Assembly: GCA_002269645.1 (NCBI GenBank)
Contig: NIVC01003137.1
Span: 1-48,153 of the forward strand
Direction: 5' to 3'
Length of the DNA stretch: 48,153 nt
Source: Macrostomum lignano
Lineage: Eukaryota
Below, piece after piece: positions 519-32,367 of the stretch. Position numbers and translations under genes: made by a program. How positions within the stretch are numbered: position 1 is the stretch's first letter; each line of letters starts with the position of its first letter. The notes below the pieces were generated by a model. That model did no database searches. It was given only the letters and a program-made list of their open reading frames with translations, and was not told the origin of the DNA.

Positions 519-3500
519 TCAGGACTCAGTCTCCTCAGCCGTGGCGTCCTTCAGCGTGACCGTGACGAAGCCGTTGTTGCTCTTGCCATCAGCCGAGGAC
601 ACCTCGTACTGGTCGGCGTCGGCCGCGGCCGAGCCAACTAGGCCAGCCCCGTTCTCGGGCCCGACCAGCGTCTCCAGCATCTCGGAGCGCAAGTCGGCAG
701 CTGGTGGCGACTCTCCGCCATCGCCGCTGCCGCTGCCGCCGTCGCCAGTCTCAGCCTCGACTGCCTGAGCAGCCTGGACCTGAGGCCGCTTCTCGCTAGG
801 CCGCTGCGCGTCCTTCTCCTCGGCGTCGATTACCGCGGCCACGCGCGGTGAGCTGGCGGCGAATCGGAGAGTTTAGGACACTTATTTGATGCCAACACCC
901 GCCAATGCCTACTTGTAGTAGTAATTGACAGTCAAAGTTCTTAGCGGGATAATTTTTCCAGCAAGTTACTAATATCGCGGAGCAAGAGATTTTAAGTGCA
1001 TTGTGATGCATCCCAGGCCAGTCTTTGTCCTCTATCCAGCCCAGTCTTTGTCCTCCTCACCCCTTCCGTATCCTCTCCACCACCGTCGCTGTCGTCACCG
1101 GCCGCGGCCACGGAGCCGCCCTCGACCTCCTCCTCTTCGGAGCCGATCAGTGTCATCTCGCGTGTCTCGCTGGCCGCCAGCTGTACCGCCACGCCCGACG
1201 TTGCCGCCTTCAGCCTCCTCGTCCTGCTGATCCTCAGCCTCCTCTTCATCAACTTCCTCCTCTTCATCATAGTCTTCCTCTTCCTCCTCCTCCTCCTCCT
1301 CGTCATCGCCAGTTTCCTCCGCTTCGTAGTCGACGCCGCTGCCATCGACACCCTGCCGGTTGGCCTCATCCAGACTGGCGATCAGGCGGTGGAAGGCCAG
1401 TTCGTTGAACAGGGTCTCGCTGAGGTCCACCAGCAGGTCCTCCAGGCAGTCCGTGAGACGGCGGCCCTGGTATCTGAAAGGCAAAGGGGAACCGATGGGT
1501 TTTGGGTCTGGACCAATCAGAGAACAGCAGGCTATTCTGGACCAATCAGAGAACAGCAGGCTATTCTGGACCAATCAGAGAACAGCAGGCTATTCTGGAC
1601 CAATCAGAGAACTGCAGGCTATTCTGGACCAATCAGAGAACAGCTGGCTATTCTGGACAAATCGGAGAACTGCAGGCTATTCTAGACCAATCAGAGAACT
1701 GCAGGCTATTCTAGACCAATCAGAGAACTGCAGGATATTCTAGACAAATCAGAGAATAGCAGGCTATTCTGGACCAATCAGGGAAATCAGACAGACTCAC
1801 TTGGCCAGCGCGTCGGTCACCAGGCTGGTAAGCTGCCGAGAGAACAGCCGCTCAAACTCGTCGTCGGAGTCAGCCGACCGCGCCATCGTGGCCGCGGCCG
1901 CTGACTGCTGGGCTGCCATGATGAGGCGAACCCGGCGCAGTGCCAGGTCGCGCAGCCAGGTGAGGAACTGCGGAGTGGCGGTCTCGTGCGCGTGCGCCTT
2001 AACCAGCGGGATGAGGTGGTGCACCACCGCTTTGATCTGCGCGTCAAGGCGGCGACTGTCGAGCAGCGGCTGGCGTGGCGGCACCGGCGGAGGTGGCGGC
2101 TGCTGCTGGCGCCGCTCACGCAGGATTTGCATGGCTCTGCGGGAGATTTGATTCAGACATAGGCTGGCAGTGTTAAACATAGGATCTAGTCGATAGCAAT
2201 TCCGACTCCTGCACCAAAGTCCCGGGTTAGATTTTGCGGCCCGGCCACGTGAACTTGGGTTTCTCGAACATGAGGGTCAGCCCCATAGGCAGCGTGCACA
2301 GGTCTTTCAAAATCCAAATCGCTCACCGGCTGAACTCTAAATCCAAAATCTCTTGATCTGTGAAACTCCTAAATCACGCACCCCACTTTCCAAACTCCCT
2401 AATGAAGTCCCAGATCCCTCACCAGCAAAACTCCCTAATGAAGTCCCAGATCCCTCACCTGCAAAACTCCCTAATGAGATCCCAGATCCGTCACCTGCAA
2501 AATTCACTAATGAAACCCAGATCCCTCACTTGCAAAACTCCCTAATGAAATCCCAGATCCCTCACCTGCAAAACTCCCTAATGAGATCCCAGATCCCTCA
2601 CCTGCAAAACTCCCTAATGAAATCCCAGATCCCTCACCTGCAAAACTCCCTAATGAGATCCCAGATCCCTCACCTGCAAAACTCCCTAATGAAATCCCAG
2701 ATCCCTCACCTGCAAAACTTTCTAATGAGATCCCGAATCCCTCACTCTCACCTGCAAAACTCCGTAACGAAATCCCGAAACTCTCGTCTTCTAAACTCCT
2801 AATTCTAAATCCCTCACCTGTCCAGGTGCACTACGGTGTCGCCCAGGGAGTCCCTGGCAAACAGGGTGCCACCGCTGGCCGCGGCCGCAGCGCTAGGCGT
2901 GGTGGACACGGAGCTGCTGGCATCGTAGTAGGCCACGGGCTCTGCGTAGTCGGCCGCGCCGCCGCCAGCCAGCCGCCGCGCCAGGGCGCGGGCCGCCGCT
3001 CGCCTCACCGCGTCTTCGTCGCCAACACCCGCCGCAGTGTTGGAAGTCGCCGTGGTGGTGGCGTAACTCTCCGAGGGCGTCTGTTCGAAGCCGGCGCCGC
3101 CTGCCGCAGCGGAAGCGCCGGTGTCGCGAAGCCACGGCGGCTGGCGACGGCTGCCACCGGCTGCGCTGCCGACCGAGCTCACCTGCCTGCCGTGGGGTAA
3201 AGGGAACGTAGTGACTAGATCTGGTTGCTATGCTCTTGACACTACGCACCTCTGAATCGGCTGCTATGGTCTAAGTTGGTTGCTATGGTCTGAGTTGGTT
3301 GCTATGGTTTGAGTTGGTTGCCATGGTCTGAGTTGGTTGCTATGGTTTGAGTTAGTTGCTATATATTCTGAGTTATTTGATTCAGAGTTAGTTGCTATGC
3401 ATCCTGAGTTAGTTGCTATGCATCCTGGGTTAGTTGCTATGCATCCTGAGTTAGTTGCTATGCATCCTGGGTTAGTTGCTATGCACTCTGAGTTAGTTGC

Positions 3501-6500
3501 TATGCATCCTGGGTTAGTTGCTATGCACTCTGAGTTAGTTGCTATGCATCCTGAGTTAGTTGCTATGCATTCTGAGTTTCTACGCATCCTGAGTTATTTG
3601 CTATGCATTCTGAGTTAGTTGCTATGCATTCTGAGTTAGTTGCTATGCATCCTGGGTTAGTTGCTATGCATCCTGGGTTAGTTGCTATGCACTCTGAGTT
3701 AGTTGCTATGCATCCTGAGTTAGTTGCTATGCATTCTGAGTTTCTATGCATCCTGAGTTAGTTGCTATGCATTCTGAGTTAGTTGCTATGCATTCTGAGT
3801 TAGTTGCTATGCATTCTGAGTTAGTTGCTATGCATTCTGAGTTAGTTGCTATGCATTCTGAGTTAGTTGCTATGCATTCTGAGTTAGTTGCTATGCATTC
3901 TGAGTTAGTACGAACCCCCAATGTTAATGGATGACTAGGCTGATGCTCATTTCCGGCTAGGCTCTTTGAATCGTCAAACCCACAGTAATCGGAATAAGAA
4001 CAGGCGGTTAACTTAAAAGAAGAAATGATGGCAAAGCATACCGCACCTGCTCAGGTGCCTGTTGACCAGCTCCTGCAGGGCCAGCAGGGCTCGCTGGCGC
4101 AGAAAGTCAGTTGACAGCAGCTGCAGCTCGCGGAACAGCTCAACCAGGTAGTGGGGCCGAGCCTCGTTTTGTGAGATCAGCGCCGCCACCTCCGAGTAGA
4201 TGCTCTCCCTCAGGCTCTCAAAGCCGCCGCGGCCGCCGACACCAGAGCCGCCCGCAGCAGCAGCGACAGCCTCCTCTTCTTCGTCGATCTCTTCCTCCTC
4301 GTCCACGTCCTCCTCCTCGTCGTACGGCACGGGCCCGGTGCCCGCGATGCCCGAGGAGACGCCGCCGCGGCCCAGCGGAGGAGTCCGGCGGCCCCGGAGC
4401 TCCTGCTGCCGCTCATCGGCGTAGGGCAAAGTGCGGGGCGAGCGGAGCGACCCGAGGTCCAGACGGGGCAGCGACTCGGTCTGCGAGCCGGCGGCTGCTG
4501 TCGCTGTGGGCTGCTGCTGCTGCTGCCTGTGGCACTGCTGGTGTGGACAGCTGGGAGGCTGCCAGTACCAGCAGGGCGGTGGCGGTGGTGGAGGCGGCGG
4601 CGGCGGCGGCATTCCGGCATGCGGGGAGTTGAAAGCCGCCAGACCGCTGACCTGCTGAGACAGGCGGCTCATCTCCTGCTGCTGGGCAGCCAGCATGGAG
4701 CAGCACTGCTGCAGGCACAGCAGCACCTGCGTGGCTGAGCCCACACCGCCCAACGGGTCCGGACGGCGTTGCTGGCGCCGGCGCCGACGCGCGTTTGCAG
4801 CCTCCTCCTCTTCCTCTTCATCGTCGTTGTCGTCGTCGTCATCGTCGATGTCCTCCTCTTCCTCCTCGGCGTCGGCCGTGTCCTCAAAGTTGGAGGCCGA
4901 AGTGGAGCCGCCCCAGGTGGCCGCGGCCGAGGCGGTGGTGGCGGCCGTCGGGTCCCCGCCGATGCCGCGCCGGCCGCCACGCAGCTCCTCGCGGAGCAGC
5001 TTCTCGGTGCGCATCCGGCCGTAGACGGTCTCGTTGGTGAGCAGCGAGGTGGTGGCCACCGGCTCCTGGAAGGTGACGCCGGCGCCGCCGACGGTCGCGG
5101 GCTCGGCAGCCCTGCGAGCGGCCTGTCCGCCGTCATCGTCATCGTCTTCGATCTCCTCTTCGTCGTCGTCGTCTTCGTCGCCGACCTCGCGGATTTCGGC
5201 AACCCGAACTCCGCCAGCCGACCGGACAGCCCCGCCACCGCCACCAGCCCTGGCTTTCTCGGCCGCCTCGACGGCTTCGGCGTCGCGCAGGCGGCTCTGC
5301 AGCTGCTCCAGCTGGCCCTGCAGCTCCGACAGGCGCTCCCGCTCTTCCATGAGCTGGCGCAGCTCCTGGGACTGCTCCAGCACGGCCAGGTCGTACAGCT
5401 GCTGCTCCGGCAGGTCGGCCGGGGCCTCCATGCCGCCAAGGGAGGAGACGCCCTCCAGCAGGGACTGCAGCCTGGCCAGCTTGGCCTTGGCGTCCCGCAG
5501 CTGCAGCGCCCGCTGCTGGGTCAGCGGGTCCGCATCCGCCCACTGCCCGCTGTCGGCCTCGGAGGAGGCGGACGCGCCGCCGCCTTTGAAGCCTCCAGAT
5601 GAGACAGCAGCAGCGGCAGCAGCGGGAGCGGCGCCCCTTTCAGAGCCGTCATCGCCGTCCAGGCTGCTGCCGTAGTTCAACAGTCGGCGACGCGCCCGAT
5701 CCTCCTGCTGCGACATCGTGGCGCTGGTGGAACTGCGGCCCGACGTGGCCGAGGCCGGGGCCGCCGGCAGCGACGATTTGGCAGCCGCGGCTGCCGCTGC
5801 GCCTCCTCGATCGGACGCGGCATCAGAGTCTGCGGACCGATGAGATTTGGATTTGAGAGAGCTCGAGACGGCACAGCTAAGTTTTAGGCAAGTTATAGGG
5901 ATCCGGGCCGGTGAGACTGGGATCCGGGCCGGTGAGACTGGGATCTGGGCCGGTGAGACTGCGATCCGGGCCGGTGAGACTGGGATTCGGACCGGTGAGA
6001 CTGGGATCGGGGACGTTGAGACTAGGATTCGGGCAGGTGAGACTGGGATCCGGGCCGGTGAGACTGGGATCGGGGACGGTGAGACTGGGATCAGTCAGAG
6101 AGATTTGGAATCTATCAGAGATTGGGGATCTTTCAGTGAGATTTGGGATTTGTCAGTGAGATTTGGGATTTGTCAGTGAGATTTGAGATCTGTCAGTGAG
6201 ATTTGGGATCTGTCAGTGAGATTTGGATTTGTCAGTGAGATTTGGGATTTGTCAGTGAGATTTGGGATCTGTCAGTGAGATTTGGGATCTGTCAGTGAGA
6301 TTTGGATTTGTCAGTGAGATTTGGGATTTGTCAGTGAGATTTGGGATCTGTCAGTGAGATTTGGGATCTGTCAGTGAGATTTGGGATCTGTCAGTGAGAT
6401 TTGGGATCAAATAGAGGTCAGAAATCATAAATCCAATGACTGACCACCCTGGCCGTGAATGAAGTCGGCCGCTTCCTGATAGTAGGACACCAGCTGCCGG

Positions 6501-10034: not shown

Positions 10035-10682
10035 GGAAATGATTATAATAAAATACATTAACAATTTGGCTATCCTGAAGAATGGTCTGTTAAATTCACT
10101 GTATGTACATTTTTTATCTATTGACATGAAACTTGCCAAAAATGAATACTTTCATTATGCTAACATTTTAGAAGTGTTTCAGTATTAAAATTCTATTTGT
10201 GAGGGTTGTAATTGAAATTCTTGGTTTCTTGGCAATTTCTTGGTTTTTTCTAGATTTTTCCAAAATTTAACAACTATTAACAATTATTAGGCCTATGCAA
10301 TTTTGAATTTATGCACTGATGTCACTGGCAAAAATTATGTCTATGACCAAATCTAGTTATAAACTCTGGGGCTTTAAGGAGAGGGGCGCTGCTAAGCTAC
10401 AAATACTGCAAATAAAGTGCTTTTCATTTAAAAATGGCTAGTGAACAACCGTTTACCCTAACATAGATTATGCCACCTCAAGAGGTTCATCTAGGTCCAG
10501 CCTTTGAACTAACAAATATGGACACTTCTAAACATTTCTAAAATGTTGGCATACCTAATGAAAACATTCATTTTTGGAAAGTTTCATGTCAATAGTTAAA
10601 AAATATACATTCAGTGAATTTAATAAATGATTCTGCAGGATAGCCAACAATTCCAATGTAATATCTTATAGCATCTGTTTCC
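10035..10682. mobile_element. Old foldback/MITE-like element with ~150-bp imperfect terminal inverted repeats
   Basis: 10035-10182 (ggctatcctgaagaat...attcactg...ctattgacatgaaacttgccaaaaatgaat...cattttagaa) matches the reverse complement of ~10520-10682. No TSD recognised. Confidence 0.6.
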
Positions 10683-11508
10683 CTAATTACTACCAATAGG
10701 AAATGAATGAAATATATAGAACTAGGCTTATTATCATCTATTTAGACATAGAGCTATAGCTAGGCGCCTATCTTGGTATCTGGCCATTTTGGTCATGCGC
10801 CTTTCATTTTACCTTTTTATCTCTTGTCTTTCTTTTATATTTCTTATTCCCATTGTGTTTAAAGCCCAGAAAAAACAGAAACAAATAAAACAAACAAAAA
10901 ACTGTTGGTTTAGACTGACATCATGCAAATAAGGTTTTTCACTTATGTTATTAGCCCATAAGCCCTTGAAAAATTTGGCTATTAATTTGGATTTAAAGGG
11001 TTACTAATCCCTATAGGTTTAATAACCTAGGCAGATGCAATAGAGCTAGAATTCATGAGGGCAAGATAGCTAGTTAGGCAATTGCCTGCCTAATAATTTA
11101 ATTGTTTAGAGAGCTATGAGCATTGCCTTCCCAAAATTTCAATGACATCAATGAAATTATATCAGAGCATTTGGTCTATGTCTATATTTGTTGTTTTGCC
11201 ATTTGGCTTCTATATCCAAAAAATCAAATTTTGCCTTGGTGTTACCATTGCGTGGCATGCCTGAACCTAGACTAGGCCTAGGCCTAGATATAATTATGGA
11301 AAACAATTTCACTGCCACATATTGATCATTTTTATTTTAATTGCACAAGTATGAAATCTTGACTTGTTCAAATTTGAATAGGGGAGGGGCTACATGAAAT
11401 TGTAATAGGCCTAGGCCTTACCCCAATTTGCCCAGGCTCACGGACTCCTACCTAAGCTACTGGCTATTTATTATTAGAGGCAGGGGGGTTGTGTGCACCC
11501 TGGCACAC

Positions 11509-11667
11509 TTTAAGCGACATCAACATACAACCAGCGAGAGGCAATACTGCCCACTCCACTGACTCCCCTGAGCAGGCATAGGCCTATAGCTAGTATAGGC
11601 TATAAGCGCGCGGATATGTACGCAGGCACACACTCACACAGGAGTGTACAGCGGCCCTAACTTTATT
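11509..11667 (-). mobile_element. SINE-like family X, copy 1, left part (interrupted by the YR element; continues at 13648-13690)
   Basis: Aligns with 35194-35334 (tttaagcgacat...gcgagaggca.tactgccca...gactcccctgagcaggca...gagtgtacagcggcc.taactttattt); right flank atcattaggcatgtacact...gtgccttggg aligns with 35335-35368. Confidence 0.75.
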
Positions 11668-13647
11668 TTAAACACGCCGGAAGGAGCCAAACGAGACAAA
11701 GTCAGTTGCGAAAAGCAGGCAGCGGCCGAGAAAGCGGATCCCAGCGGATCAAGCGAAGCGTTTATTTATTAGTTTAAACGAGTTAATATTTATTGGTTCG
11801 TAAAAAGGAGATAAAAAAATTGAGAAATGGCGGCGGAGCCAAGCCGGGCCGGGTGCAGAGGCTTTAAGCTGGCCGGCGCGGCCAACACCCCCACACCTCA
11901 ACCCCCCGCCAAAGTACAGCGACATGTACAGCGGCACCCTCCGGCGCGTCTAACACCCCTTACTCAGAGAGTAACGATTGCATTAAACACGCCGGAAGGA
12001 GCCAAACGAGACAAAGTCAGTTGCGAAAAGCAGGCAGCGGCCGAGAAAGCGGATCCCAACCCCAATGATGGGGAAGGGAAGGAGTAAAAGCGGGAAGGCA
12101 GTCAGGTGGACGCAGCCTGCAGCTGCGAAGCCATGAAAGAAGCAGAGCGCTGGCGGCGCGACAGGGCAGAGCTGGCAGAAAAGTAGCGGAGAACAGCGTC
12201 CGATCTCCAGACCCCAAGAGCCCGAACGTCCGATTCTGACAAGCCGATTTGATAGCAGAAACTGGCACCCCCACGTCGGATGCTGTGGCCGGAGAAACCA
12301 GCAGCTGGGAGGCCGCACGCAGCCAGACACGCACGAAGACAGCTGATGAACTGGCTGGCTGAGAGCTCGCCTCTGAGGCCGTAGCCAAAGAGTGGCGCCT
12401 TTGGGTCGCTGGTTGGTGACAGGTGCAGGTGAGACCGCAGGGCGCGCACAGGGCAGAGCGGTGACTCTTGAACAGGTGGCAGAAGAACGACATGCGGCGT
12501 CGACCCGAACTGGTTGGTCTTGGACTTAGGGAGGGCCAACTTCCAGCAGCCAGATGAAGCCAACAGGCAGGCCCGCGAGACAGAGCGGCTGCCGCGGGTC
12601 GATAGGAAGTCGCCAAGGCGCAACATGCCCCACCAGCCCACCAGAAGAGCCGCCCAGAAGGCGGCCCTGAGATCTGCGCTTGAGATGGAGCGCGGGAGCT
12701 GCTGATGGATGCTCTTGAGGTGCTCGATGGTCAGCGGCTTCGCCTGTTTGCATCGCAGGCCCAGATGACGTTTGGCGCCGCGGAGGGCCAGCTGCACGGT
12801 GAAGTTTTTCGCTGGGTCGGGGGCGCCGGTGGCTTGGTGCAGAAAAGAGACGGCATGGATGTAGGATCGGAGGCTAGAGAAGGACCGGAGCCGGGTGCTC
12901 ACCAGGTGCGCGATGTAGCGGCAGAGCAGGTCACCGTCAGCTGGAGATGAAGGGCGGCCTGCGCTAACACAGAAGGCTTCCCAGGAGCGCAGCTGGCTGA
13001 GGTAGCATCGCCAGGAGTTGTCCGCCAGGCCGAGGCGGCACAGGTGTCCGGCGGACACAGCGCGGGGGGCGGGCGGCGTCTCTGGAGGGCGAGGGCGACC
13101 TGATGATGATGCTGGCTGAGGCTGAGCCGTCAAGCACTGCTGAGTGTGAAGCTGTTGCTGAAGATCACGACGACGGCCTTCCAGGACTTGCAGTTCGAGC
13201 AGCTCCACCTCCTGCCGCAGCGCAGCCAGCCGGTCGCTCCCCGCCCCCGGAGGCGCCTCGCCCGCGCTGCCGATGGCGTCTTCGGCGTCCGGAGCAGAAG
13301 TCATCTCGGAGTTGTTGAAGTCTTCGTCAGCTTGCTCTAAACCGAGTGCAGTAGACAAGCGCTTGGCAAGCTGTTGTTTGCGGCCCGTAGTAGGCAGGCC
13401 TCTGTTTCGCAGCTCAGCCTTGAGTTGGCGCACGTTTAGTCGCTTTGGGCTGCCACTCATGGCGGTGGCTGAGCAAAAAAATTGAGAAATGGCGGCGGAG
13501 CCAAGCCGGGCCGGGTGCAGAGGCTTTAAGCTGGCCGGCGCGGCCAACACCCCCACACCTCAACCCCCCGCCAAAGTACAGCGACATGTACAGCGGCACC
13601 CTCCGGCGCGTCTAACACCCCTTACTCAGAGAGTAACGATTGCATTA
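11668..13647 (-). mobile_element. RT-less tyrosine-recombinase element with split direct repeats (Ngaro/PAT-like architecture), 1,980 bp
   Basis: 76-bp repeat at 11668-11743 and 11983-12058; 173-bp repeat at 11813-11985 and 13475-13647; both pairs appear identical; single YR ORF; flanks rejoin to match the uninterrupted repeat at 35.2-35.4 kb. Confidence 0.9.
12102..13460 (-). CDS. SAP-domain / tyrosine recombinase fusion protein, 452 aa from the Kozak ATG at 13460
   Basis: SAP-like LNVRQLKAELRNRGLPTTGRKQQLAKRL; YR motifs MLRLGDF (R, 12618-20), KSKTNQFG (K), GHSIRRGGA (HxxR, 12276-87), GVWRSDAVLRY (W, Y at 12183-85); start context gccaccgccATG; intronless and uninterrupted. Confidence 0.92.
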   Translation of the reverse strand: MSGSPKRLNVRQLKAELRNRGLPTTGRKQQLAKRLSTALGLEQADEDFNNSEMTSAPDAEDAIGSAGEAPPGAGSDRLAALRQEVELLELQVLEGRRRDLQQQLHTQQCLTAQPQPASSSGRPRPPETPPAPRAVSAGHLCRLGLADNSWRCYLSQLRSWEAFCVSAGRPSSPADGDLLCRYIAHLVSTRLRSFSSLRSYIHAVSFLHQATGAPDPAKNFTVQLALRGAKRHLGLRCKQAKPLTIEHLKSIHQQLPRSISSADLRAAFWAALLVGWWGMLRLGDFLSTRGSRSVSRACLLASSGCWKLALPKSKTNQFGSTPHVVLLPPVQESPLCPVRALRSHLHLSPTSDPKAPLFGYGLRGELSASQFISCLRACLAACGLPAAGFSGHSIRRGGASFCYQIGLSESDVRALGVWRSDAVLRYFSASSALSRRQRSASFMASQLQAAST

Positions 13648-16027: not shown

Positions 16028-18103
16028 ATGCCAGCCATTCCCAGGCAAAGGCGCTACGATCAGGTGATGGGCGATCGAGAGCCCAAAATCACCGACAAGC
16101 GTTTCGCGCAGGAGCTGCAGCAGAAGCTGGAAGATAAGCAAAGAGTGAGCGGTTTTCTTGCCTGTTTGAGTCTGTCCGAGTACAGCTTCTCTTTCATGTT
16201 CATGAAAACGTCACGTCAGAGATATCGGTATTCTGATCTTCAATCAGGTCCACTAGACCATCCACTAGGTCACTCGAACATCCACTAGGTCACTCGACCA
16301 TCCACTAGGTGACTCGACCATCCACTAGGTCACTCGACCATCCACTAGGTCACTTGTTCATCCACTAGGTCACTCGACCATCCACTAGGTCACTCGACCA
16401 TCCACTAGGTCACTTGTTCATCCACTAGGTGACTTGACCATCCACTGGTCACTTGACCTTCCACCAGATGAATATAGACCCCAATCAGACTCAATTACTG
16501 ACCAGTGCTCCAACAAAACCCCATCAAGATGATGCAGCAGCAGAAGGAGCGCCGCCTGGCCGAGGCTGAGTCCCGCCGGGTCCGCAAGCTGGTGCTGGAT
16601 GGCGTCATCGAGCCGGGCGAGGCCAAAGGCGCAGCTGCAGCCGGCGAGGGCCGCCGCGGCCGGGACGCCGAATGGAAGGAGTTCTGGCCGCCGAATCCGT
16701 ACAAGACGGTGAGGCTCCGCAAAGAATCCTTTCTTTTAATTTGTGGCTCAGTTCAGGAAAGTCTCAAGAACACCTGGGAAGCAGATGTTCAGTGCGGCAT
16801 GCAGATACCAAGCCATATGTGATTGGCACCTGAATTTCAATAATCCATTCCGAGTGGACAGCAAAGTTTAGCTGCAGTTTCGGAAAGCTGAAAATGTCCT
16901 GCAAGCGGCCACCAGTGCAACTCATGCAGCTTCCCTCTCACATTAGCTGTCCATGAATCGGCTCAAAGCATAAATGCACCCACCAACCCTGCCGCCCTCA
17001 GCTGGCTGAGTACGAAGAGGAGAAAAAGCGGAAGGCGGACGAGGCCGGGCGGCAGCCGCACTCGGAGCCGGCGGAGACTCAGAAGGTGAGGCGTCGGACT
17101 GTCTTGCAGTTTGCGTGCAGCTCATTTGCCAACGCTCTTTGCCCGATTTGACGCCACTAGGCGTTGGGGGCCACTAGGGTTGGCGCCACTAGGGCTGGTG
17201 TAACGAGGGCTTGCGCCTCTAGGGTTGGCGCCACTAGGGTTGGCGCCACTAGGGCTGGCGCCACTAGGGCTGGTGTCACGAGGGCTGGCGCCTCTAGGGT
17301 TGGCGCCACTAGGGTTGGCGCCACTAGGGCTGGCGCCACTAGGGTTGGCGCCACTAGGGCTGGCGCCACTAGGGCTGGTGTCACTAGGGTTGGCGCCACT
17401 TGGGTTGATGTCACTAGAGCTGGTGTCCCTAGGGCTGTCGTCCCATGTTTTGGAGACACTAGGGCTGCCGTCCCATGTTTTGGAGACACTAGGGCTGCCG
17501 TCCCATGTTTTGGAGACACTAGGGCTGCCGTCCCATGTTTTGGAGACACTAGGGCTGCCGTCCCATGTTTTGGAGACACTAGGGCTGTCGTCCCATGTTT
17601 TGGAGACACTAGGGCTGTCGTCCCTTGTTTTGGCGCCACTAGGGCTGCCGTCCGTTGTTTTGGAGACACTAGGGCTGCCGTCCGAATTGTTTTGGAGACA
17701 CTAGGGCTGCCGTCCCATGTTTTGGCGCCACTAGGGCTGGCTCGAAGATTCAAAACAACGAAATCGCAAGGTTTCGAGCTGGTGGAAATGATGTGCAATT
17801 TCTGATGAGCCTTTTTAAATTGCCGGGGTGTCAACTCAGTGCCCGCCTGCTCCATTCCAGCTCGCAGAGTCCGAGCCGGCCACCGAGGAAGCCCAGGCCA
17901 CTTCGGCAGCCGCCACCGCGGGCGAGCACCGAGCAGCGGAGTCGGCCGCGCCCGCTGGCCGCTACGAGGGCACCCAGTCGCCGCGCATCGAGGAGCTGAT
18001 GCGCGAGGAGGACCTCGACCAGCTGTACAGCAAGGCCTCGCAAATCGTGTACATCATGACGCCGCCAGCGAAAAGGCAGCAGGCCGCCAAGTTGCACCGC
18101 TGA
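16028..18103 (+). CDS. Uncharacterised spliced gene. Exons ~16020/16028-16144, 16506-16708, 17002-17085, 17861-18103; charged/coiled-coil protein
   Basis: GC3-rich codons. Clean phase-0 GT-AG joins ...PNPYKT|LAEYEEEKKRK...TQK|LAESEP...KLHR*. Exon 1-2 phase unresolved. No family recognised. Confidence 0.6.
16250..16465. repeat. 20-bp minisatellite (ccatccactaggtcactcga), about 10 copies
   Basis: Direct tandem repeat in intron 1 of the uncharacterised gene. Confidence 0.93.
17157..17740. repeat. 15-bp (gcgccactagggttg) grading into 30-bp (ggagacactagggctgccgtcccatgtttt) minisatellite
   Basis: Direct tandem repeats in intron 3. Confidence 0.93.
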
Positions 18104-20125: not shown

Positions 20126-20959
20126 CAGCGCTTGCTGAAGTTCAATTTAAACGAAGTTTCATTCCATTGAAACAGATGAAATTCAATTTAGACCGCCTGT
20201 GGCCAAAATCGTCCCGAAGTGACGCGACCTTTGAATTTGAAATTCAAGGGAAACAAAGATATTCTATTTCGGCAGATTTTTGTCAGATATAGATACATTT
20301 TTAAAAAGTTAATCTTCTTTTTTCATTGTACAGCATAAGTCTTCAATTATTGCGCACCAAGAATCGACATGAGTGCTGAAGATGATCAGATTGAAGAATC
20401 GATTACTTTGACCTGCCAAAAGTGCCATGTAGAAGTTAGAAAGCAAAGTTCACTCAAGTGCATTTGGAAATTTTATAGTTTTTATAGTTGCTTCCCGTGA
20501 TAAATTTGAACAGGAAATCTAGCTATAAAGTTTCGAATTTTAAAAACCTTACTGAAGAGGATAAATAAATTTACCTAATAACTCATGAAGATAGAGACTT
20601 AATTGAAATTCTAGCAAAATTCATCAGACTTGGCGCAAGCCAAAATGCAACTGAGGCTTCATATTGGCTTTATAAAGAAGCTTATAATTGATTCTATCTA
20701 GTTAGCCAGTGCGGGTTGTCAAGACCAAGTGCTCCTAGTGGTCCTTGAGCCAGCTTGCATGCATGGTTTAGTCTTGTTTAATTGCTTTTCATGCAAGCAG
20801 TTTTTTCAAACAAAGTAAATGGGGATGCGGTTCTATCATTAACTATTATCTGATCTTATCAGTTTTTGTCAGCCAGGTAGCTGCACAGGTGCTCCTGCGA
20901 TAACCATCATTCAGCATGCAGCCATATCTTGATAATCTCCTTGAAAATGGCTGAACTAA

Positions 20960-22280
20960 TTACTAGCACTCCCGCTAGCACTTCCAATAGCACTCCCAGT
21001 AGCACTCCAACTAGCACTCCCACAAGCACTCCCAGTAGCACCCCAACTAGCACTCCCACAAGCACTCCCACAAGCACTCCCACTAGCACTCCCACAAGCA
21101 CTTCCACAAGCACTCCCACTAGCACTCCCACTAGCACTCACAAGCACTCCCACAAGCACTCCCACAAGCACTTCCACTAGCACTCCCACAAGCACTCCCA
21201 CTAGCACTCCCACTAGCACTCCCACAAGAACTCCCACAAGCACTTCCACTAGCACTTCCACAAGCACTTCCACTAGCTAGCACTCCCACAAGCACTCCCA
21301 CAAGCACTTCCACTCCCACAAGCACTCCCACAAGCACTTCCACTAGCACTCCCACAAGCACTTCCACAAGCACTCCCACAAGCACTCCCACAAGCGCTCC
21401 CACTAGCACTCCCACAAGCACTCCCACTAGCACTCACAAGCACTCCCACAAGCACTCCCACAAGCACTTCCACTAGCACTCCCACAAGCACTCCCACTAG
21501 CACTCCCACTAGCACTCCCACAAGAACTCCCACAAGCACTTCCACTAGCACTCCCACTAGCACTCCCACAAGCACTCCCACAAGCATTCCCACAAGCACT
21601 TCCACTAGCACTCCCACTAGCAATCCCACAAGAACTCCCACAAGCACTCCCACAAGCACTTCCACTAGCACTCCCACTAGCACTCCCACAAGAACTCCCA
21701 CAAGCACTCCCACAAGCACTCCCACAAGCACTTCCACTAGCACTCCCACTAGCACTCCCACAAGAACTCCCACAAGCACTCCCACAAGCACTCTCACAAG
21801 CACTCCCACAAGCACTCCCACTAGCACTCCCACAAGCACTCCCACAAGCACTTCCACAAGCACTCTCACAAGCACTCCCACAAGCACTTCCACTAGCTAG
21901 CACTCCCACAAGCACTCCCACAAGCATTCCCACAAGCACTTCCACAAGCACTTCCACAAGCACTCCCACAAGCACTCCCACAAGCACTCCCACTAGCTAG
22001 CACTCCCACAAGCACTCCCACTAGCACTCCCACAAGCACTTCCACTAGCTAGCACTCCCACAAGCACTCCCACAAGCATTCCCACAAGCACTTCCACAAG
22101 CACTTCCACAAGCACTCCCACAAGCACTCCCACAAGCACTCCCACTAGCTAGCACTCCCACAAGCACTCCCACTAGCACTCCCACAAGCACTCCCACAAG
22201 CACTCCTACTAGCACTTCCACTAGCACTCCCACAAGCACTCCCACAAGCACTCCCACAAGCACTCCCACAAGCACTCCCA
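20960..22280. repeat. 12-bp minisatellite (cacaagcactcc / cactagcactcc variants), about 110 copies
   Basis: Direct tandem repeat ending about 250 bp before the ENaC ATG. Confidence 0.96.
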
Positions 22281-22533: not shown

Positions 22534-25500
22534 ATGACATCGAGTGACTCAGAGACGGAATCCCCGACGGGCGGCTCCCTGATGTGGCAGCTTCGCGAGA
22601 AGGCACTCGTCGCCTTCGCCCAGCAGACCACCGCGCACGGCCTGGTGCGCCTGACGCAGGGCTCCCAGCTTCGCCGCTTCATCTGGGCCCGGCCATCCTG
22701 GGCGCCTTCGTCGGCTTCTCCCTGAACCTTGCAGAGCTCATCCAGCGGTACCTGAGCTACCCAGTGAGCACCGAGTTCTCCAGAGACGGTGCGAACTTCG
22801 AGTTCCCGTCTGTGACCATCTGCCCGACCAACATGTTCGCCTACGCGTGCTCAGCCGTAGTCAGCAACCACTCTGTTTCAGGTACTCGAGAAGAGAGCAC
22901 AACTTTCTGCTGACTCTGGAGCACATGCATGTACAAAGGTGCCAGTACTATGCGCAGGCACGCACACATACACATGCTCACACAGGGTGTACAGCGGTCT
23001 TGACTTTCTAATCGTCAGTTCGCGGCTTGGGGTTGGCCCCGGCCGATATTTTGTTCACAAGCCCGAAATGAATGCGCATGACCGCACACGGAACCAAACC
23101 AGGGGGAAATGCCTCTCTTTGATGTCACATTTACTTTTTGTAACACACGTACGTTGTACCTGTCTCTCAGGGTGGAATAAATGCTTGGTTTCCATGATGG
23201 AAGGCTCTCCCTACCTGTTCTCTCTGCTCAACCGGACCGACTGGAACGCCTCAATGCCAAAGAATCCGGTGGAGTTTTACCCGGACGGAAAAAACTCGAT
23301 ACGAGCCATGGTGTACCGCGGTCACCTGTTCGCCCAGGCCTACGAATCCGTGATCTACTGCAGGTACAAGAATGAGGACTGCACCTTTGAGAACTTCACC
23401 GAGTATAAAGATGAGGACAGGTACTTGCAAAATGCTTGCCACATTGGACTTCTTTAATATCGGTCAGAAATTGGGGATCAAATGAGCTTCGATCGAATTC
23501 CATTCCAGGTGGTGGTGCTTTTCCTTCAACCCGTCGAATCACACAGTCATCGAGGTGGGCGAAGGCAAGGGGCTCTACCTGGTTCTTCACCTGAGAGGAG
23601 ATGCTTATCTCACTTACGAACAGCAAGTTGACTACGTGCCCGGCTTTCGGGTGGTGCTCCATCAGGCCGGTGAGGAGCTGCTTGCTCAGATCCTCATGCA
23701 GTAACAGCATCTAGTTTGCAAATATGCACAGATTCAAGACTACGCTCGTATGAGCAATGCAGAGTCAAAATCTGAGTTCATGAAAAGAAAAACTTATGAA
23801 GAAAGATTACGAGCATGCGGTATCAGTTCTCAGGTGTCCGTGTGCTCCCAGCCTACTCATCCCTCAGAGTGCAGAGTGTCCGTGCGCTCCCCTCAGCCTA
23901 CGAGTACTCTCCCCTCAGAGTGCAGAGAAAAACAAGATTTCGAAAGATTTCAGGTGAGAAAAAATCTTTCCAAAACACGCACCGGCAGGGTTCAAGCCAG
24001 ACTTGAACATGGGATTCAACGCACCTTATGGCCAGAAGACCTCCGTACAAGTGAAGGCCGAGACCGTCACCAAAGTCAGCCGCAAAGGCTCGCCGTGCAG
24101 CGATGAGCTGCCGAACATCACCTACACGATGGACTACTCGTGGCCTGGAAACTGGGAGAACCAGAGCTTCTTCAGCACCACCGAGGACTGCGTAACGCGG
24201 CTCAAGCAGGAGGAGTTCAAGGAGACGTGCGGCTGCCTCAGCGCTAATCTGGCCCTGCCCAGCGACCTCATGGATGGCACAAAAATGTGTCACGACCTGC
24301 CGGAAGAGGTACAGCAGCGGCTGCCGGCAAAAGCCATTGCAGTCGTATTCAGCAACAATTTCCAATCGATTCTAGATCAATAGCTGTTAGCCACTGCACC
24401 ATGAGCCACTGCCAGCACCAGCCATGACAGTCCAGTCGCTATAGTAGTGCTTTCGTCCCACCTACAACATGTAAATGTCGCTAGCGATGAGCCCTTGGGA
24501 AGTTTTTGGTGTCGCAGCTTCCTGAGGGCCGAAAGCTCGGTGAACACCCTATATAGGTCCCCCTCGCCTGCTCGTTGACCAGACTGCAATCAGATGTACT
24601 GGCGATATTTATCAGGAAGGAGGCAAATTCTTAGCAGGTTTTTAGCGAGAAAATGATGAATGCAACAGTAGCAAGTGATAAGTGTCAGTGGCAGTGACAA
24701 CGGTTGCAGGTAGTCAATTAGCTGTCACTAGCCTAAAAAACTAACGCTATTGATGGTCATGGCGTCGTTAGCCACTGCTACCGTTAGTTCGTTAGCTACC
24801 CGTCATCCAAGTTAAAGCGAGCTGCTCACACTTGCTGCTTTACACCTTGCTCATACTCGTATCTTGATAGCTATTCATGTTCTCAGGAACCATGCTTGAA
24901 TTTATGGGGAATTGTAGCCTAGTGGTCAGAGCGTCGGGACTCACGATTGAAAGGTCGGGGGTTCAATTCTTGACCCACTCGGAACTCTGCAAATTGTTTC
25001 AGTTCACCCAGCTGTAAAAGGGTTTACCAGCTAGCATTAGCTCGGGTAGTTGAGGATATGTGGCGACCGGCCCCCAGTCCTTGGCCTGGTCACTGAACAG
25101 CCGTACGCAGCCTTCAGATGCGCCGCGCATTAACTGCAGCTTAGCTGTTGGTTGTACATCTGGTCCATTAGGGCAGGTGTAATCAATTACTACTCGTATT
25201 GTTATTGAATTCCTAAGAGCAAGAGGTTAGGAAAAAACTTCCTCGGAGTAAAAGGTGTTAAATGTGAAGTAAAAAGTAAAAAGTGGCTGTTAAGCGACAG
25301 ACCATTTGCTTTTCTTTTTTTAAACGCAGGGACAGCTATAAACTTTTCTGGTTGTCCCTGATCTAACCATTGCAACTCACGCGACAATTCTATTCACAGT
25401 ATTTGCTGAAGTACCAAGAACACCGTCTGAACAAGTTCAACATGACCGAATACGTCATTAAGCTCAATAATTCGTGGATTGAGCCGCTCGCAGACTACGT

Positions 25501-26726
25501 TCTGAATCACTGGCACTGGTTCAACAACACCAAGAAGCTGGTTGAATGCTATCACCGAGTCGAGAGCAGGCAGAAAACAGATGGCGTTCGAGTCGACAAG
25601 TGCCCAGTCCGCTGCAGCAACACGCAATACAAAACCGTCACCACCCTGACCTCCTGGCCAAAGGACGTGCCCTTAGCCATTGAAATCCTGAAGAGCTACA
25701 CAAGCAAAATCCTCGCCCGGGTCAGCGGCACTGGCCTGCGAACACTAAGATTGGAGGTATTGCAAAACTTTACCTACGCTTCGCTCAGCCAAGCCGTGGT
25801 CAACCTGACCGCTAAAAACCTGGCATCGTCCAGGGACTTCATCAGCGTGTTGGACGTATATCCAGCGTCCACCAAGGCCAGCGTCTTCACCGAGTCGTTC
25901 GCCTACCCGCTGCGGAATCTGTTCTCCGACTTTGGCGGCATTCTCGGTGAGTTGCAGTCAATTGGATTTTGCGAAAAGTGGCGTGCACAGAGTAGGGCCA
26001 GGGGAGGTTAGCTCTCCTCCAAGGGAATAACTAAGCTAATAGAATAACAGCCGAGCTCAACTATTGCTACCTGTTGGAAGTGGCACCGACGTGGCGCCTG
26101 GGAGGTAGGGGGTTAGTGCATCCACCAACAGAAAGAGGCGTAAAGCAAAGTACCAAAACGCCAGCTACGAGCTACAACACCCCCGCGTAGTCAAAAAGCA
26201 AACTATTGCGCAACTCTATCGACCCCTAAAATAAATAAAATCGAAATTTCACGTCGGTTTTCAGGCGCTGAGAAATTTCGATGACGTAAAACATTGTTAA
26301 GTACATCCATGCATTCTGCTGCTACCGGAATCGACACCTTTTAATATTCGTAGTGGTTAGTTGTAAAGATATGCCCTGCGATTTATTGGTTTCAACAGTC
26401 TGTCACTTCATTGCACCTGTGCAGGCCTGTGGATCGGAGTATCGGTCATCACCCTGACGGAGATGCTGGAACTCGTCATCAACATGGCCCAGCTGGCCTC
26501 GCTCAGGCTAAACACAGCCGCCAAGAAGTTGTCTGCAAAAGTGCAACCCCAGCCGGAAGTGAGTGCGGACCGCAAGCCAGAGGAGGAAGTGCACGTGCAT
26601 CTGCTGGAAGAAGCGACCAAAAACCTGTCCGATGAGTCGACCAAGCGCCGTTTCAAAGTGAGCGAGCGGGACCTGATCGCGCACCGGGGCTCCTGGCTGG
26701 AGAAGATCCAAACACTGCTGGAATGA
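22534..26726 (+). CDS. DEG/ENaC (ASIC/FaNaC-family) sodium channel subunit. Exons 22534-22881, 23171-23420, 23509-23669, 23989-24308, 25400-25946, 26425-26726; apparent 1-bp deletion at 22690/22691
   Basis: TTAHG gating motif, TM1, YLSYPVST, FPSVTICPTN, WCFSFN, PGFRVVLH, CGC, FSDFGGILG|LWIGVSVITLTEMLEL (TM2, GxS filter); all introns GT-AG and in phase. Confidence 0.9.
22905..23040 (-). mobile_element. SINE-like family X, degraded copy 2, ENaC intron 1
   Basis: gcaggcacgcac...ctcacacagggtgtacagcgg...gactttc...cttggggttggc resembles copies 1 and 3. Confidence 0.5.
24903..25204 (+). mobile_element. tRNA-derived SINE (family Y), about 300 bp, ENaC intron 4
   Basis: A-box TAGCCTAGTGG 24915-24925, B-box GGTTCAATTCT 24960-24970, degenerate cloverleaf, body gttcacccagctgtaaaagggt, att-rich tail, possible ttgaatt TSD (24896-24902 and 25205-25211). 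Confidence 0.7.
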
Positions 26727-29790: not shown

Positions 29791-30489
29791 AGATGAGGCA
29801 GGCGGCAGACATCCTGCATGCAGTAAAATGTATCCTGCTCCCGTTGAGCTCAATCGCCCCTAGCAACCAGCTGTCCAAGCCGTCAGCTCAGACTGCAGCC
29901 ACCTCAGCCCCCCTCCCGATGCCGGAGGGCTCATTAAAGCTCTGAGACTTGACGATTGTCGCTAATGGAAAATCAATTTTCCCGGTTCCAATCGGATTGG
30001 CGACAGCAAAAGACTGCTTTATCCAATCGCCGCGTATCCATCAGTCGAGATTGCTTTCCACTCTGTTTTGCATTCCATTTAGCCAATGTATTTCTTGTCT
30101 TAATTGATAGACAACACTGACGGTTGCTATTGGTAACTGATTTCCATTGCTCTCTACAGTCTGCACAGCTCTAGATTTAACCTGACTTGGCTGCAGGGTG
30201 GTCCGGGAGTCCGTCCTGCAGAGGGATCTTCCGTAGGGAAGATCTTCCGCCTGTCGCCAGGCGGAACTGAGTTTGCATAGCTCAAGGATGCGAAGCGATT
30301 CATAAGCACCGCTTTATATACATGTAACTGTACTGAGTAAGCTTGAAAAGGCTGCTGATGAACATTGGATTATGAAGACCACAGTGGGACCACGCCAAAA
30401 AACTGCACTGCTCCACGACCCACTCTCGTTATTAATATAATTTCGATATCGAAATAAGAACCCATCTTAAGTACTGTTAGCTCAATCAC

Positions 30490-31086
30490 ATGGAGTGACT
30501 GGTTGAGTGTTGAAGTGACTTGGAGAATGCTGGAGTGACTTGGGGAATGCTGGAGTGACTGGGAGAATGCTGGAGTTGGAGTGACTTTGGGAATGCTGGA
30601 GTGACTTGGAGAATGCTGGAGTGACTTGGGGAATGCAGGAGTGACTTGGGGAATGCTGGAGTGACTTGGAGAATGCTGGAGTGACTTAGGGAATGCTGGA
30701 GTGACTGGGAGAATGCTGGAGTGACTGGGAGAATGCTGGAGTGACTTGGGGAATGCTGGAGTGACTTGGGGAATGCAGGAGTGACTGGGAGAATGCTGGA
30801 GTGACTTGGGGAATGCAGGAGTGACTGGGAGAATGCTGGGGTGACTTGGAGAATGCTGGAGTGACTTGGAGAATGCTGGAGTGACTTGGGGAATGCAGGA
30901 GTGACTTGGGGAATGCAGGAGTGACTGGGAGAATGCTGGAGTGACTTGGGGAATGCAGGAGTGACTTGGGGAATGCAGGAGTGACTTGGGGAATGCAGGA
31001 GGGACTGGGAGAATGCAGGAGTGACTGGGGGAATGCAAGAGTGACTGGGAGAATGCTGGAGTGACTTGGGGAATGCTGGAGTGACT
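30490..31086. repeat. 20-bp minisatellite (gagtgacttggggaatgctg), about 29 copies
   Basis: Direct tandem repeat. Confidence 0.95.
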
Positions 31087-31099
31087 AGTTAAGTGCTAG

Positions 31100-32342: not shown

Positions 32343-32367
32343 AAACTAAAAAAAAACTATTTGACAG

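What the first reader, a model, noticed from the sequence alone, without database searches (positions are those of the whole stretch)
11668..13647. Compact RT-less tyrosine-recombinase element with perfect split direct repeats
Seen: on the ORF strand the order is A1(13647-13475) - ORF - B1(12058-11983) / A2(11985-11813) - 69-bp spacer - B2(11743-11668). Both repeat pairs look identical, so the insertion is young. Known: A1-ORFs-B1A2-B2 split direct repeats define Ngaro/PAT/TOC1-type YR retrotransposons, which need RT/RNase H to make a circular intermediate. Cryptons are YR-only but have no such repeats. Seen: this 1,980-bp element has one ORF and no RT or RNase H motif I could find in any frame. 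Inference: it is either a semi-autonomous YR retroelement that keeps its own integrase and borrows RT in trans, or an undescribed DNA-only YR transposon class.
Basis: partly seen in the sequence, partly recalled or inferred. Interest (0 to 1): 0.92.

Follow-up and report, generated by a model that had tools for sequence, protein, structure and literature searches.

The report
RT-less recombinase-only flatworm retrotransposon derivative
This is a young 2-kb mobile element in a Macrostomum flatworm genome that keeps the split end-repeats and the recombinase of a Ngaro-type retrotransposon but has lost its reverse transcriptase, so it most likely copies itself with borrowed enzyme; it is an unusual variant of a known kind, not a new class.

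Summary
On the minus strand the order is A1 (173 bp), one ORF, B1 (76 bp), A2, a 69-bp spacer, then B2. Both repeat pairs are 100% identical. A TAA trinucleotide sits at the B1/A2 junction and at both outer ends.

The ORF (ATG 13460, 452 aa) encodes a SAP motif, a long helix, a disordered linker and an intact Cre-like tyrosine recombinase (R-K-H-R-W-Y all present). No RT or RNase H is detectable in any frame of the 48-kb window.

The host is Macrostomum lignano or a close relative. Its gene models show other copies at other loci, and paralogous recombinases (38-42% identity) that sit directly behind RT/RNase H and a SAP-bearing Gag. All Macrostomum recombinases form one clade nested among RT-linked ones. 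The SAP/helix module is the N-terminus of that family's Gag, joined to the recombinase at about 13099/13097.

The best reading is a compact Gag-N::YR derivative of a Ngaro-type retrotransposon. It keeps every cis feature and its own integrase and most likely borrows RT in trans. A DNA-only, Crypton-like route is not excluded but is disfavoured. This is a new variant of a known kind, of moderate interest.

The parts
13475..13647 (-). A1, the 5' terminal split direct repeat (173 bp). It begins with the TAA crossover trinucleotide (13647-13645) and contains the element's only TATA-like motif, TTAAAG, at 13529-13524.
   Evidence: 100% identical to A2. Motif scan. The promoter role is inferred.
13461..13474 (-). 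14-nt leader between A1 and the ATG, with a Kozak-like context (GCTCAGCCACCGCC-ATG).
12102..13460 (-). Single ORF of 452 aa plus stop, encoding a Gag-N::YR fusion protein.
13346..13448 (-). SAP helix-loop-helix DNA-binding motif (aa 5-38).
   Evidence: Pfam SAP E 3e-11. PDB SAP hit 1zrj. AF2 helices at 10-19 and 27-38. The same module sits at the N-terminus of the Gag-like models P0007 and P0012.
13131..13244 (-). Single long helix (aa 73-110), a candidate coiled coil. It is homologous to the coiled-coil segment of the family's Gag.
   Evidence: AF2 helix H73-110. 85-90% identical to P0012. Comparable segments occur in P0007, P0073 and P0008.
13095..13101 (-). Junction between the 5' (Gag N-terminal) module and the YR module (..atcatcatcagg|t|cgccct..).
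   Evidence: P0012 matches the window up to 13099 (frame +2) and then continues into a Gag core that is absent here. P0006 starts at 13097, and the YR homology of P0009 and P0007 starts at about 13100. The junction lies in an AF2-disordered linker, aa 111-136.
12105..13049 (-). Cre-like tyrosine recombinase with core-binding and catalytic domains (aa ~138-452). Catalytic residues are R281, K314, H392, R395, W418 and Y426.
   Evidence: phmmer vs PDB hits Cre at 1.6e-9 over aa 143-426. Conserved columns in the 42-sequence alignment. pLDDT >90. Foldseek hits Cre at 2e-12, target TM 0.75-0.79.
12059..12101 (-). 43-nt segment between the stop codon and B1.
11983..12058 (-). B1, the internal copy of the 3' repeat (76 bp). 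Together with A2 it forms the internal B-TAA-A 'circle-junction' template.
   Evidence: 100% identical to B2
11813..11985 (-). A2, the internal copy of the 5' repeat. It overlaps B1 by the TAA trinucleotide (11985-11983).
11744..11812 (-). 69-bp AT-rich spacer (32% GC). It carries the element's only three AATAAA hexamers (11794-11789, 11770-11765, 11766-11761), 17-45 nt upstream of B2.
   Evidence: The poly(A) function is inferred.
11668..11743 (-). B2, the 3' terminal split direct repeat. It ends with TAA (11670-11668).

Best explanation
The 1,980-bp unit is a young, compact, RT-less derivative of a Ngaro-type tyrosine-recombinase retrotransposon lineage native to Macrostomum.

What it keeps:
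- the complete cis apparatus: A1, the internal B1-TAA-A2 junction, and B2;
- a TATA-like motif late in A;
- poly(A) signals just before B2;
- one intact fusion gene, in which the first ~120 residues of the family's Gag (SAP DNA-binding motif plus a long helix) are joined through a disordered linker to a complete Cre-like recombinase.

Proposed life cycle. The anatomy is shown; every step below is inferred from the established DIRS/Ngaro model.
1. Transcription starts late in A1 and ends at the start of B2.
2. RT/RNase H, and probably full Gag, from full-length relatives in the same genome copy this RNA in trans.
3. The internal B1-A2 copy serves as template to restore the missing ends and form a circular DNA with a B-TAA-A junction.
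4. The element's own recombinase recombines that TAA with a genomic TAA, leaving the insert flanked by TAA with no true target duplication.

Origin: either an internal deletion of the Gag core, RT and RNase H, or reverse transcription of a spliced SAP-helix/YR messenger. The same YR-side boundary recurs in three subfamilies, and the same SAP-helix/YR junction recurs in a second subfamily, so the second origin is a live possibility.
For: Anatomy.

The recombinase is intact:
- Cre match in PDB, 1.6e-9.
- R281 and K314 invariant; H392, R395, W418 and Y426 at least 90% conserved.
- AF2 pLDDT >90 and Foldseek Cre 2e-12.

No RT/RH in any frame of the window.

Host and copies:
- P0006 (95% identity), P0012 (90%) and P0016 are M. 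lignano gene models.
- Their host parts are absent from this window, so they lie at distinct loci.
- P0016 reads contiguously through the same SAP-helix/YR junction.

RT-bearing paralogs in the same genome:
- P0073 has a YLDD motif matching the RT motif C of P0112.
- The P0073/P0009 block directly upstream of the YR aligns to the connection/RNase H of Ngaro-type RT ORFs (hhalign 97.7%, E 2e-12, 187 columns).
- P0007 has SAP, coiled coil, Gag core, a CCCH knuckle, the start of an RT, then YR.
- P0012 has the same 5' module and then continues into a Gag core.

Tree: all Macrostomum YRs form one clade (84.5% bootstrap), nested among RT-linked YRs.

Outside relatives are gag-RT-YR units bounded by direct or split repeats: L001, L005-L007, L009 and L011, and P0069 and P0112.

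Literature:
- In DIRS-type elements a trinucleotide at the circle junction also flanks each insert, and DIRS-1 RT acts in trans on an RT-deleted construct (PMC7192593).
- SIRE corresponds to the A2-B2 part of VIPER (PMC6681497).
Against: - No DNA of any other copy of this family could be retrieved. That the 2-kb form is fixed and that it carries the same A/B ends elsewhere therefore rest on protein gene models, which are chimeric and may contain predicted introns.
- No full-length element with these exact A/B ends has been seen.
- Transcription start, poly(A) use, trans-complementation and circle formation are all inferred.
- RT/RNase H in P0073 and P0009 is not recognised by Pfam or PDB sequence search, only by BLAST to RT motif C and by profile-profile alignment.
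- Recent work on DIRS-1 found mainly linear single-stranded cDNA rather than circles (PMC7192593), so the circle step is itself uncertain.
Confidence: 0.6

Rival explanations
1. DNA-only, Crypton-like mobility. The element's own recombinase excises it as a double-stranded circle by recombining the two outer TAA sites and reintegrates it at another TAA. No RNA or RT is involved, and the split repeats are inherited baggage. This would be a Crypton-like DNA transposon newly born from a retroelement.
For: - YR is the only gene, and it is intact.
- Both ends and the internal junction share the same TAA core, so excision is chemically the reverse of integration.
- The SAP-helix-YR architecture recurs in a second subfamily, P0008.
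- Kojima & Jurka could not rule out that some Cryptons derive from DIRS-like elements (PMC3212892).
Against: - The YR nests within RT-linked YRs.
- There is no DUF3504 match, unlike animal Cryptons (criterion from PMC3212892).
- It retains perfect 173-bp and 76-bp split repeats, and its poly(A) signals sit after A2 rather than after the ORF. Both only make sense for an RNA-templated cycle.
- Cryptons have no long terminal repeats.
Confidence: 0.1
2. Immobile by-product. This is a one-off internal deletion, or a recombination product between copies, of a full-length element. It is a dead end, and the identical repeats only reflect how recently the parent inserted.
For: - Only one copy is visible in the window.
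- Internally deleted copies are common in YR retroelement families (fragmented DIRS-1 copies, PMC7192593).
- No DNA of a second short copy could be obtained.
Against: - The ORF is intact and in frame across the junction, with a good start context.
- P0016, at another locus, reads through the same junction, and P0006 starts at it.
- A second subfamily, 40% identical, shows the same SAP-helix/YR junction (P0008) alongside an RNase H-linked sister at 87-92% identity (P0009).
Confidence: 0.15
3. Origin variant, compatible with the best explanation for propagation. The short form is not a random deletion but a reverse-transcribed copy of a spliced subgenomic mRNA, in which a Gag N-terminal exon is joined to an acceptor just upstream of the recombinase. 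Full-length elements would normally use that mRNA to express SAP-helix-YR.
For: - The YR-side boundary is the same residue position in three subfamilies: window/P0006 'G|RPRPPE', P0008/P0009 'RAP..', P0007 'G|RLPATP'.
- The 5' side up to the junction is also alignable between the window and P0008.
- Within one young subfamily, a short model (P0008) and an RNase H-linked model (P0009) coexist.
- The junction sequence ..CAG|G.. fits an exon-exon consensus.
- The junction lies in a disordered linker.
Against: - P0012's continuation after ..IIIR implies ...AGG AAA..., which is not a GT donor if that model is colinear.
- All of this evidence comes from automated gene models, whose 'junctions' may themselves be predicted introns.
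- No transcript data were available.
- A search of the paper library turned up no report of splicing in Ngaro elements; I read hits only in the DIRS-1 paper.
Confidence: 0.25
4. Assembly artefact. The A/B duplication arose from mis-joined reads of a repeated element.
For: Perfect identity of both repeat pairs, in a genome that is very repeat-rich.
Against: The arrangement is exactly the canonical A1-...-B1A2-B2 order, with a unique 69-bp spacer, a consistent TAA at all three junctions and unique flanks. An assembler error would not be expected to produce that.
Confidence: 0.03

Closest known systems
Ngaro-type YR retrotransposons (Goodwin & Poulter 2004; order gag - RT/RNase H - YR, with A1 ... 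B1A2 ... B2 split direct repeats downstream of the YR)
   Same: - Same repeat architecture, with the internal repeats downstream of the YR.
- Cre-like YR of the same clade.
- Trinucleotide at the junction and both flanks.
- Relatives in the same genome have RNase H directly followed by YR, with no methyltransferase.
- The N-terminus of the ORF is a piece of the family's Gag.
   Different: - No RT, RNase H or Gag core.
- 2 kb, against about 5-6 kb for the complete relatives read here (L005 unit period 5,441 bp; L009 repeat spacing 6,158 bp).
- YR is expressed as an in-frame fusion to a SAP/helix Gag fragment.
- It cannot be autonomous for reverse transcription.
SIRE / VIPER (Trypanosoma) and TOC1 / TOC3 (Chlamydomonas): non-autonomous derivatives of YR retroelements
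   Same: They are short derivatives that keep the terminal split repeats of an RT-bearing parent. SIRE corresponds to the A2-B2 segment of VIPER (PMC6681497), which is directly analogous to the A2-69 bp-B2 tail here.
   Different: SIRE is a ~435-bp unit with no described protein gene (PMC6681497). From my own recollection, not checked here, TOC1 also lacks a recombinase. This element keeps an intact recombinase, so it is autonomous for integration.
Cryptons (YR-only DNA transposons; CryptonA/I in animals)
   Same: The only gene is a tyrosine recombinase. A circular intermediate and recombination at a short shared core are proposed for both.
   Different: - Cryptons have only 4-6 bp terminal direct repeats, and animal Cryptons have no terminal repeats.
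- CryptonA YRs match Pfam DUF3504; this one does not.
- This YR nests among RT-linked YRs.
TR-GAG / LARD / TRIM-type derivatives of LTR retrotransposons (recalled from general knowledge, not checked here)
   Same: A short internally reduced retroelement that keeps the terminal repeats and at most one protein, and relies on relatives for RT.
   Different: A different order of elements. The retained protein there is Gag, not the integrating enzyme.
Cre recombinase of phage P1 (structural and mechanistic analogue)
   Same: Two-domain fold, with R-K-H-R-W-Y including the Trp that is typical of Cre. Best PDB match by both sequence and fold.
   Different: About 20% identity. This protein has an extra N-terminal SAP motif and long helix, and sits in a eukaryotic transposon context.

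Membership tests
Ngaro-type YR retrotransposon | Encodes a tyrosine recombinase with the R-H-R-Y catalytic set | tested here: met
Ngaro-type YR retrotransposon | Split direct repeats A1 ... B1A2 ... B2, with the internal pair downstream of the YR | tested here: met
   Definition taken from PMC4157794 and PMC13465315.
Ngaro-type YR retrotransposon | Encodes RT and RNase H (and no methyltransferase) | tested here: not met
   No RT/RH in any frame of the element or the window. The feature is present only in paralogous Macrostomum gene models (P0073, P0009), where RNase H abuts the YR with no MT. The element is therefore a derivative of the lineage, not a full member.
Ngaro-type YR retrotransposon | Gag-like ORF1 | tested here: inconclusive
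   Only the N-terminal ~120 aa (SAP plus helix) of the family's Gag is present, fused to the YR. The Gag core and zinc knuckle seen in P0007, P0073 and P0012 are absent.
Ngaro-type YR retrotransposon | YR groups phylogenetically with RT-linked YRs | tested here: met
   NJ tree, (Macrostomum clade 84.5%).
DIRS/Ngaro integration signature | The same trinucleotide at the circle junction and at both flanks of the insert | tested here: met
   TAA at 11985-11983, 13647-13645 and 11670-11668. Rule as stated in PMC7192593.
DIRS1-like | Inverted terminal repeats plus an internal complementary region; methyltransferase domain | tested here: not met
   No inverted repeats within the element. No MT.
PAT-like | Split repeats with the internal pair upstream of the ORFs (A1-B1A2-ORFs-B2), plus MT | tested here: not met
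   The internal pair lies downstream of the ORF. No MT.
Crypton (DNA transposon) | YR is the only transposition enzyme encoded | tested here: met
Crypton (DNA transposon) | No long terminal repeats; only 4-6 bp direct repeats (none in animal Cryptons) | tested here: not met
   173-bp and 76-bp split direct repeats. Criterion from PMC3212892.
Crypton (CryptonA, animals) | YR matches Pfam DUF3504 (DIRS/Ngaro YRs do not) | tested here: not met
   No DUF3504 hit at E<=1. Criterion from PMC3212892.
Crypton (DNA transposon) | Moves as DNA without an RNA intermediate | not testable with these tools
   Needs an intron-marked reporter or detection of excision footprints.

The most novel reading that the evidence does not exclude
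The element, and the parallel SAP-helix-YR form in a second Macrostomum subfamily, could be a retroelement caught turning into a DNA transposon. In that case this recombinase-only unit excises and reintegrates as DNA through its TAA sites (a 'Crypton born from a Ngaro'), or it is the retro-copied product of a dedicated spliced recombinase mRNA. Either would give a concrete, experimentally tractable link between YR retrotransposons and Cryptons, whose evolutionary direction is unresolved.
Probability: 0.12. Interest if true: 0.8.

Novelty: new variant of a known kind. Interest (0 to 1): 0.5.

Why it matters
Derivatives of YR retrotransposons described so far, such as SIRE, are short units without a described recombinase gene. 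Cryptons, which carry only a recombinase, lack long end repeats. An element that keeps the full retro-style ends plus a working-looking integrase, while discarding RT, sits between those two kinds.

It offers a small natural substrate (2 kb, one gene) for testing three open points in a transgenic-amenable animal:
- whether YR retroelement RT acts in trans;
- whether circular junction intermediates really form;
- whether the recombinase alone can move such an element as DNA.

It also shows that Gag of this flatworm lineage begins with a SAP DNA-binding motif. Fused to the recombinase, that motif may steer integration to AT-rich DNA. If the element is only a recent deletion copy, it is an ordinary non-autonomous element.

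Tried and rejected
- Exact-protein look-ups of the ORF (452-aa ATG form and 484-aa GTG form) in public assemblies: not on record.
- Word-indexed homology searches returned very little. The single protein gave 5 distant hits, the 42-sequence profile gave 5 hits, and the N-terminal module gave none. So no DNA of other Macrostomum copies could be fetched, and copy number and fixity of the 2-kb form could not be measured directly.
- Metagenome scans: the single protein found no relatives. A 3-sequence profile found only 6 distant loci.
- Pfam and PDB sequence searches did not recognise the RNase H-like block of P0073/P0009. Profile-profile comparison did.
- Rfam: no RNA family in the window.
- I considered reading the structure as a tandem heterodimer [A-ORF-B][A-spacer-B], formed by a circle integrating into a SIRE-like solo unit. 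It is topologically identical to the canonical split-repeat layout and cannot be distinguished from it here. I kept it only as a note.
- I looked for inverted-repeat recombinase binding sites around the TAA cores and for similarity between the flanks and the element. Only a 5-bp palindrome and an 11-mer (GCCGCTGTACA, expected about 0.1 by chance) turned up. I judged both not significant.
- Canonical splice signals at the junction could not be evaluated without the full-length genomic copy.
- A YR phylogeny against named Ngaro, DIRS, PAT, VIPER and Crypton references was not possible because no reference sequences were available. I used context-labelled relatives instead.
Full report
**Observation.** The repeats are exactly as reported. 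A is 173 bp (13475-13647 = 11813-11985) and B is 76 bp (11983-12058 = 11668-11743). Both pairs are 100% identical, and neither occurs anywhere else in the 48-kb window. On the minus strand the order is A1 - ORF - B1/A2 - 69-bp spacer - B2.

B1 and A2 overlap by the trinucleotide TAA, and the same TAA forms both outer boundaries (...TGA|TAA|TGCAATC... and ...GTGTT|TAA|AATAAAG...). Given the composition of the flanks, this has a chance probability of about 4e-4.

The single long ORF most plausibly starts at ATG 13460, in a Kozak-like context, and stops at 12102-12104, giving 452 aa. Pfam recognises only an N-terminal SAP motif.

**The protein.**
- Residues ~143-426 align end to end with Cre recombinase (phmmer vs PDB, 1.6e-9).
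- In a 42-sequence alignment, R281 and K314 are invariant and H392, R395, W418 and Y426 are at least 90% conserved. All six are present here.
- An AlphaFold2 model (mean pLDDT 84, above 90 over the recombinase) shows four parts: a SAP helix-loop-helix (10-38), one 38-residue helix (73-110), a disordered linker (111-136), and a two-domain recombinase.
- The best PDB fold matches are all Cre (Foldseek 2e-12, target TM 0.75-0.79, ~310 columns).

The recombinase therefore looks functional.

**No RT.** HMMs built from Ngaro-type RT/RNase H ORFs, searched against all six frames of the whole window, give only noise (best E 0.5-4). The YR profile hits only this ORF (7e-149).

**Host and copies.** The window carries metazoan exons: PCM1 C-terminus, ASC channel, PC4 and importin-beta repeats. 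It is packed with minisatellites.

An exhaustive HMMER search found about 12,000 YR relatives. The closest are Macrostomum lignano gene models:
- P0006: 95% identity to aa 122-450.
- P0012: 90% identity to aa 1-99.
- P0016: a degenerate copy.
- P0007, P0008, P0009 and P0073: 38-42% identity.

These models are chimeras with host genes (methionine synthase, GPCR/cadherin, Mab-21, PH domain). None of those host parts occurs in this window, so the copies lie at different loci.

**Relatives carry RT.** Within Macrostomum:
- P0073 has a GYLDDFAVAG motif that matches the RT motif C of an RT-YR protein.
- The block directly upstream of the YR in P0073 and P0009 aligns to the connection/RNase H part of Ngaro-type RT ORFs (hhalign 97.7%, E 2e-12, 187 columns). 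Pfam and PDB sequence searches miss it.
- P0007 has SAP, a coiled coil, a Gag core, a CCCH knuckle and the start of an RT before its YR.

Outside Macrostomum, every relative whose context could be read and that looks eukaryotic is RT-linked:
- P0001: an ORF with a weak, sub-threshold RT match (RVT_1 E 6e-4) sits directly upstream of the YR.
- P0003: gag-RT-YR, as two tandem units in L005.
- P0002: RT then YR, with split repeats in L009.
- P0069 (a fungus) and P0112: RT-YR polyproteins.
- L011: gag-RT/RH-YR. L010: RT-methyltransferase-YR.

A neighbour-joining tree puts all Macrostomum YRs in one clade (84.5% bootstrap), nested among RT-linked YRs and far from bacterial integrases. The window YR is sister (61.5%) to the P0008/P0009 pair.

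**The ORF is a Gag-N::YR fusion.** P0012 shares the SAP-helix module with the window up to 13164 in frame 0. It then shares 13134-13099 in the +2 frame ('LDGSA.ASIIIR'). After that it continues into a Gag core resembling P0007 and P0073, which the window lacks. On the other side, P0006 begins at 13097, and the YR homology of P0009 and P0007 begins at about 13100. The two modules therefore meet at about 13099/13097, inside the disordered linker.

The same YR-side boundary recurs in three subfamilies. P0008 (SAP-helix-YR) has the same junction as the window although it is only ~40% identical, and its YR is 87-92% identical to that of P0009, which is RNase H-linked. P0016 also reads contiguously through the junction.

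This argues against a one-off accident. It leaves two origins open: an old short lineage or deletion, or reverse transcription of a spliced SAP-helix/YR messenger. Neither can be tested without genomic DNA or transcripts of the full-length copies.

**RNA signals.** The only AATAAA hexamers in the whole element are three clustered in the 69-bp, 32%-GC spacer, 17-45 nt before B2. The only TATA-like motif lies in A, 55 nt before its end. A transcript would then start late in A1 and end early in B2, with A2 and B1 holding the missing end sequences. This is the logic of split-repeat YR retroelements. It is an inference from motif positions, not a demonstration.

**Literature.**
- Cryptons have only 4-6 bp terminal direct repeats, and animal Cryptons have none.
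- CryptonA YRs match DUF3504, whereas DIRS/Ngaro YRs do not (PMC3212892). This protein has no DUF3504 hit.
- Split direct repeats define Ngaro, PAT and VIPER elements (PMC4157794, PMC13465315).
- In DIRS-type elements a trinucleotide at the circle junction also flanks each insert. DIRS-1 RT was shown to act in trans on an RT-deleted construct, although the cDNA seen was mostly linear and single-stranded (PMC7192593).
- SIRE, the short VIPER derivative, corresponds to the A2-B2 region (PMC6681497), like the A2-spacer-B2 tail here.
- No paper in the library links Macrostomum to YR elements.

**Verdict.** The element is a young, compact, RT-less derivative of a Macrostomum Ngaro-type retrotransposon lineage that keeps its recombinase. 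It most likely propagates through RNA with RT supplied in trans and integrates with its own recombinase at TAA (confidence about 0.6).

The alternatives are:
- an immobile by-product (about 0.15);
- DNA-only, Crypton-like mobility (about 0.1);
- an assembly artefact (about 0.03).

The spliced-mRNA origin (about 0.25) is compatible with the main explanation. Because the RT/RNase H criterion is not met, I do not file the element as a Ngaro element proper. I treat it as a new variant of that kind, of moderate interest.

**What failed.**
- Look-ups of the exact protein found nothing.
- The word-indexed searches returned almost nothing.
- Metagenome scans found only distant loci.

As a result, copy number, fixity of the 2-kb form and the existence of a full-length parent with the same A/B ends remain untested at the DNA level.

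Noticed in passing
window 4013-5716 (-): A 567-aa ORF at ~69% GC whose C-terminus matches PCM1_C (Pfam 3e-29). It looks like a large exon of a pericentriolar-material-1-like host gene. Exon GC contrasts sharply with the 31-45% GC surroundings.
   Followed up: partly
window 25370-26011 (+), 31629-32342 (+), 39018-39581 (-): ORF fragments matching the amiloride-sensitive sodium channel (ASC, 3e-8), the transcriptional coactivator PC4 (6e-8) and importin-beta TPR repeats (7e-12). These are host gene exons and confirm a metazoan origin.
   Followed up: partly
window-wide, e.g. 96-490, 3306-3980, 17092-17706, 20902-21900, 30457-31216, 32288-33300, 35417-37500, 39972-42000, 42643-43321, 45875-47210: Extraordinary density of minisatellite arrays (periods 12, 15, 19-21, 25, 28-30, 36, 40, 74-76 bp), some with strong GC or AT skew. 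They account for many of the long spurious ORFs in the window.
   Followed up: no
window 10066-10157 and 10556-10647: A 92-nt inverted repeat pair, 88% complementary, with 398 nt between the arms, in AT-rich DNA about 1 kb from the element. It could be a MITE-like or foldback element.
   Followed up: no
window 11262-11285, 11395-11418, 11574-11593, 10744-10763: Short recurring TAGGCCTAGGCCT / CTATAGCTAG motifs in the DNA flanking the element's 3' side. Possibly remnants of another dispersed repeat into which the element inserted.
   Followed up: no
proteins P0110 (Glandiceps talaboti), P0018 (Patella vulgata), P0144 (Argopecten irradians): RefSeq gene models from other marine invertebrates encode related YRs (30-36% identity) with a 140-170 aa N-terminal extension. 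P0110 has a coiled-coil-like stretch and is annotated 'integrase/recombinase xerD homolog'. 'N-terminal extension + YR' proteins may be widespread, but their genomic context could not be fetched.
   Followed up: partly
L005 (GCA_030719055.1 contig JAPJDW010000291.1) 572-10259: Two complete gag-RT-YR units in head-to-tail tandem (period 5,441 bp) on one contig. This is either a tandem insertion or an assembled circular or multimeric form of a Ngaro-type element.
   Followed up: no
window 13135-13163 (-) versus P0012: The M. lignano model P0012 skips about 29 nt here and changes reading frame between the SAP-helix module and the Gag core. This could be a very short intron, an indel between copies, or a frameshift site in the full-length element's Gag. 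It is unresolved.
   Followed up: partly
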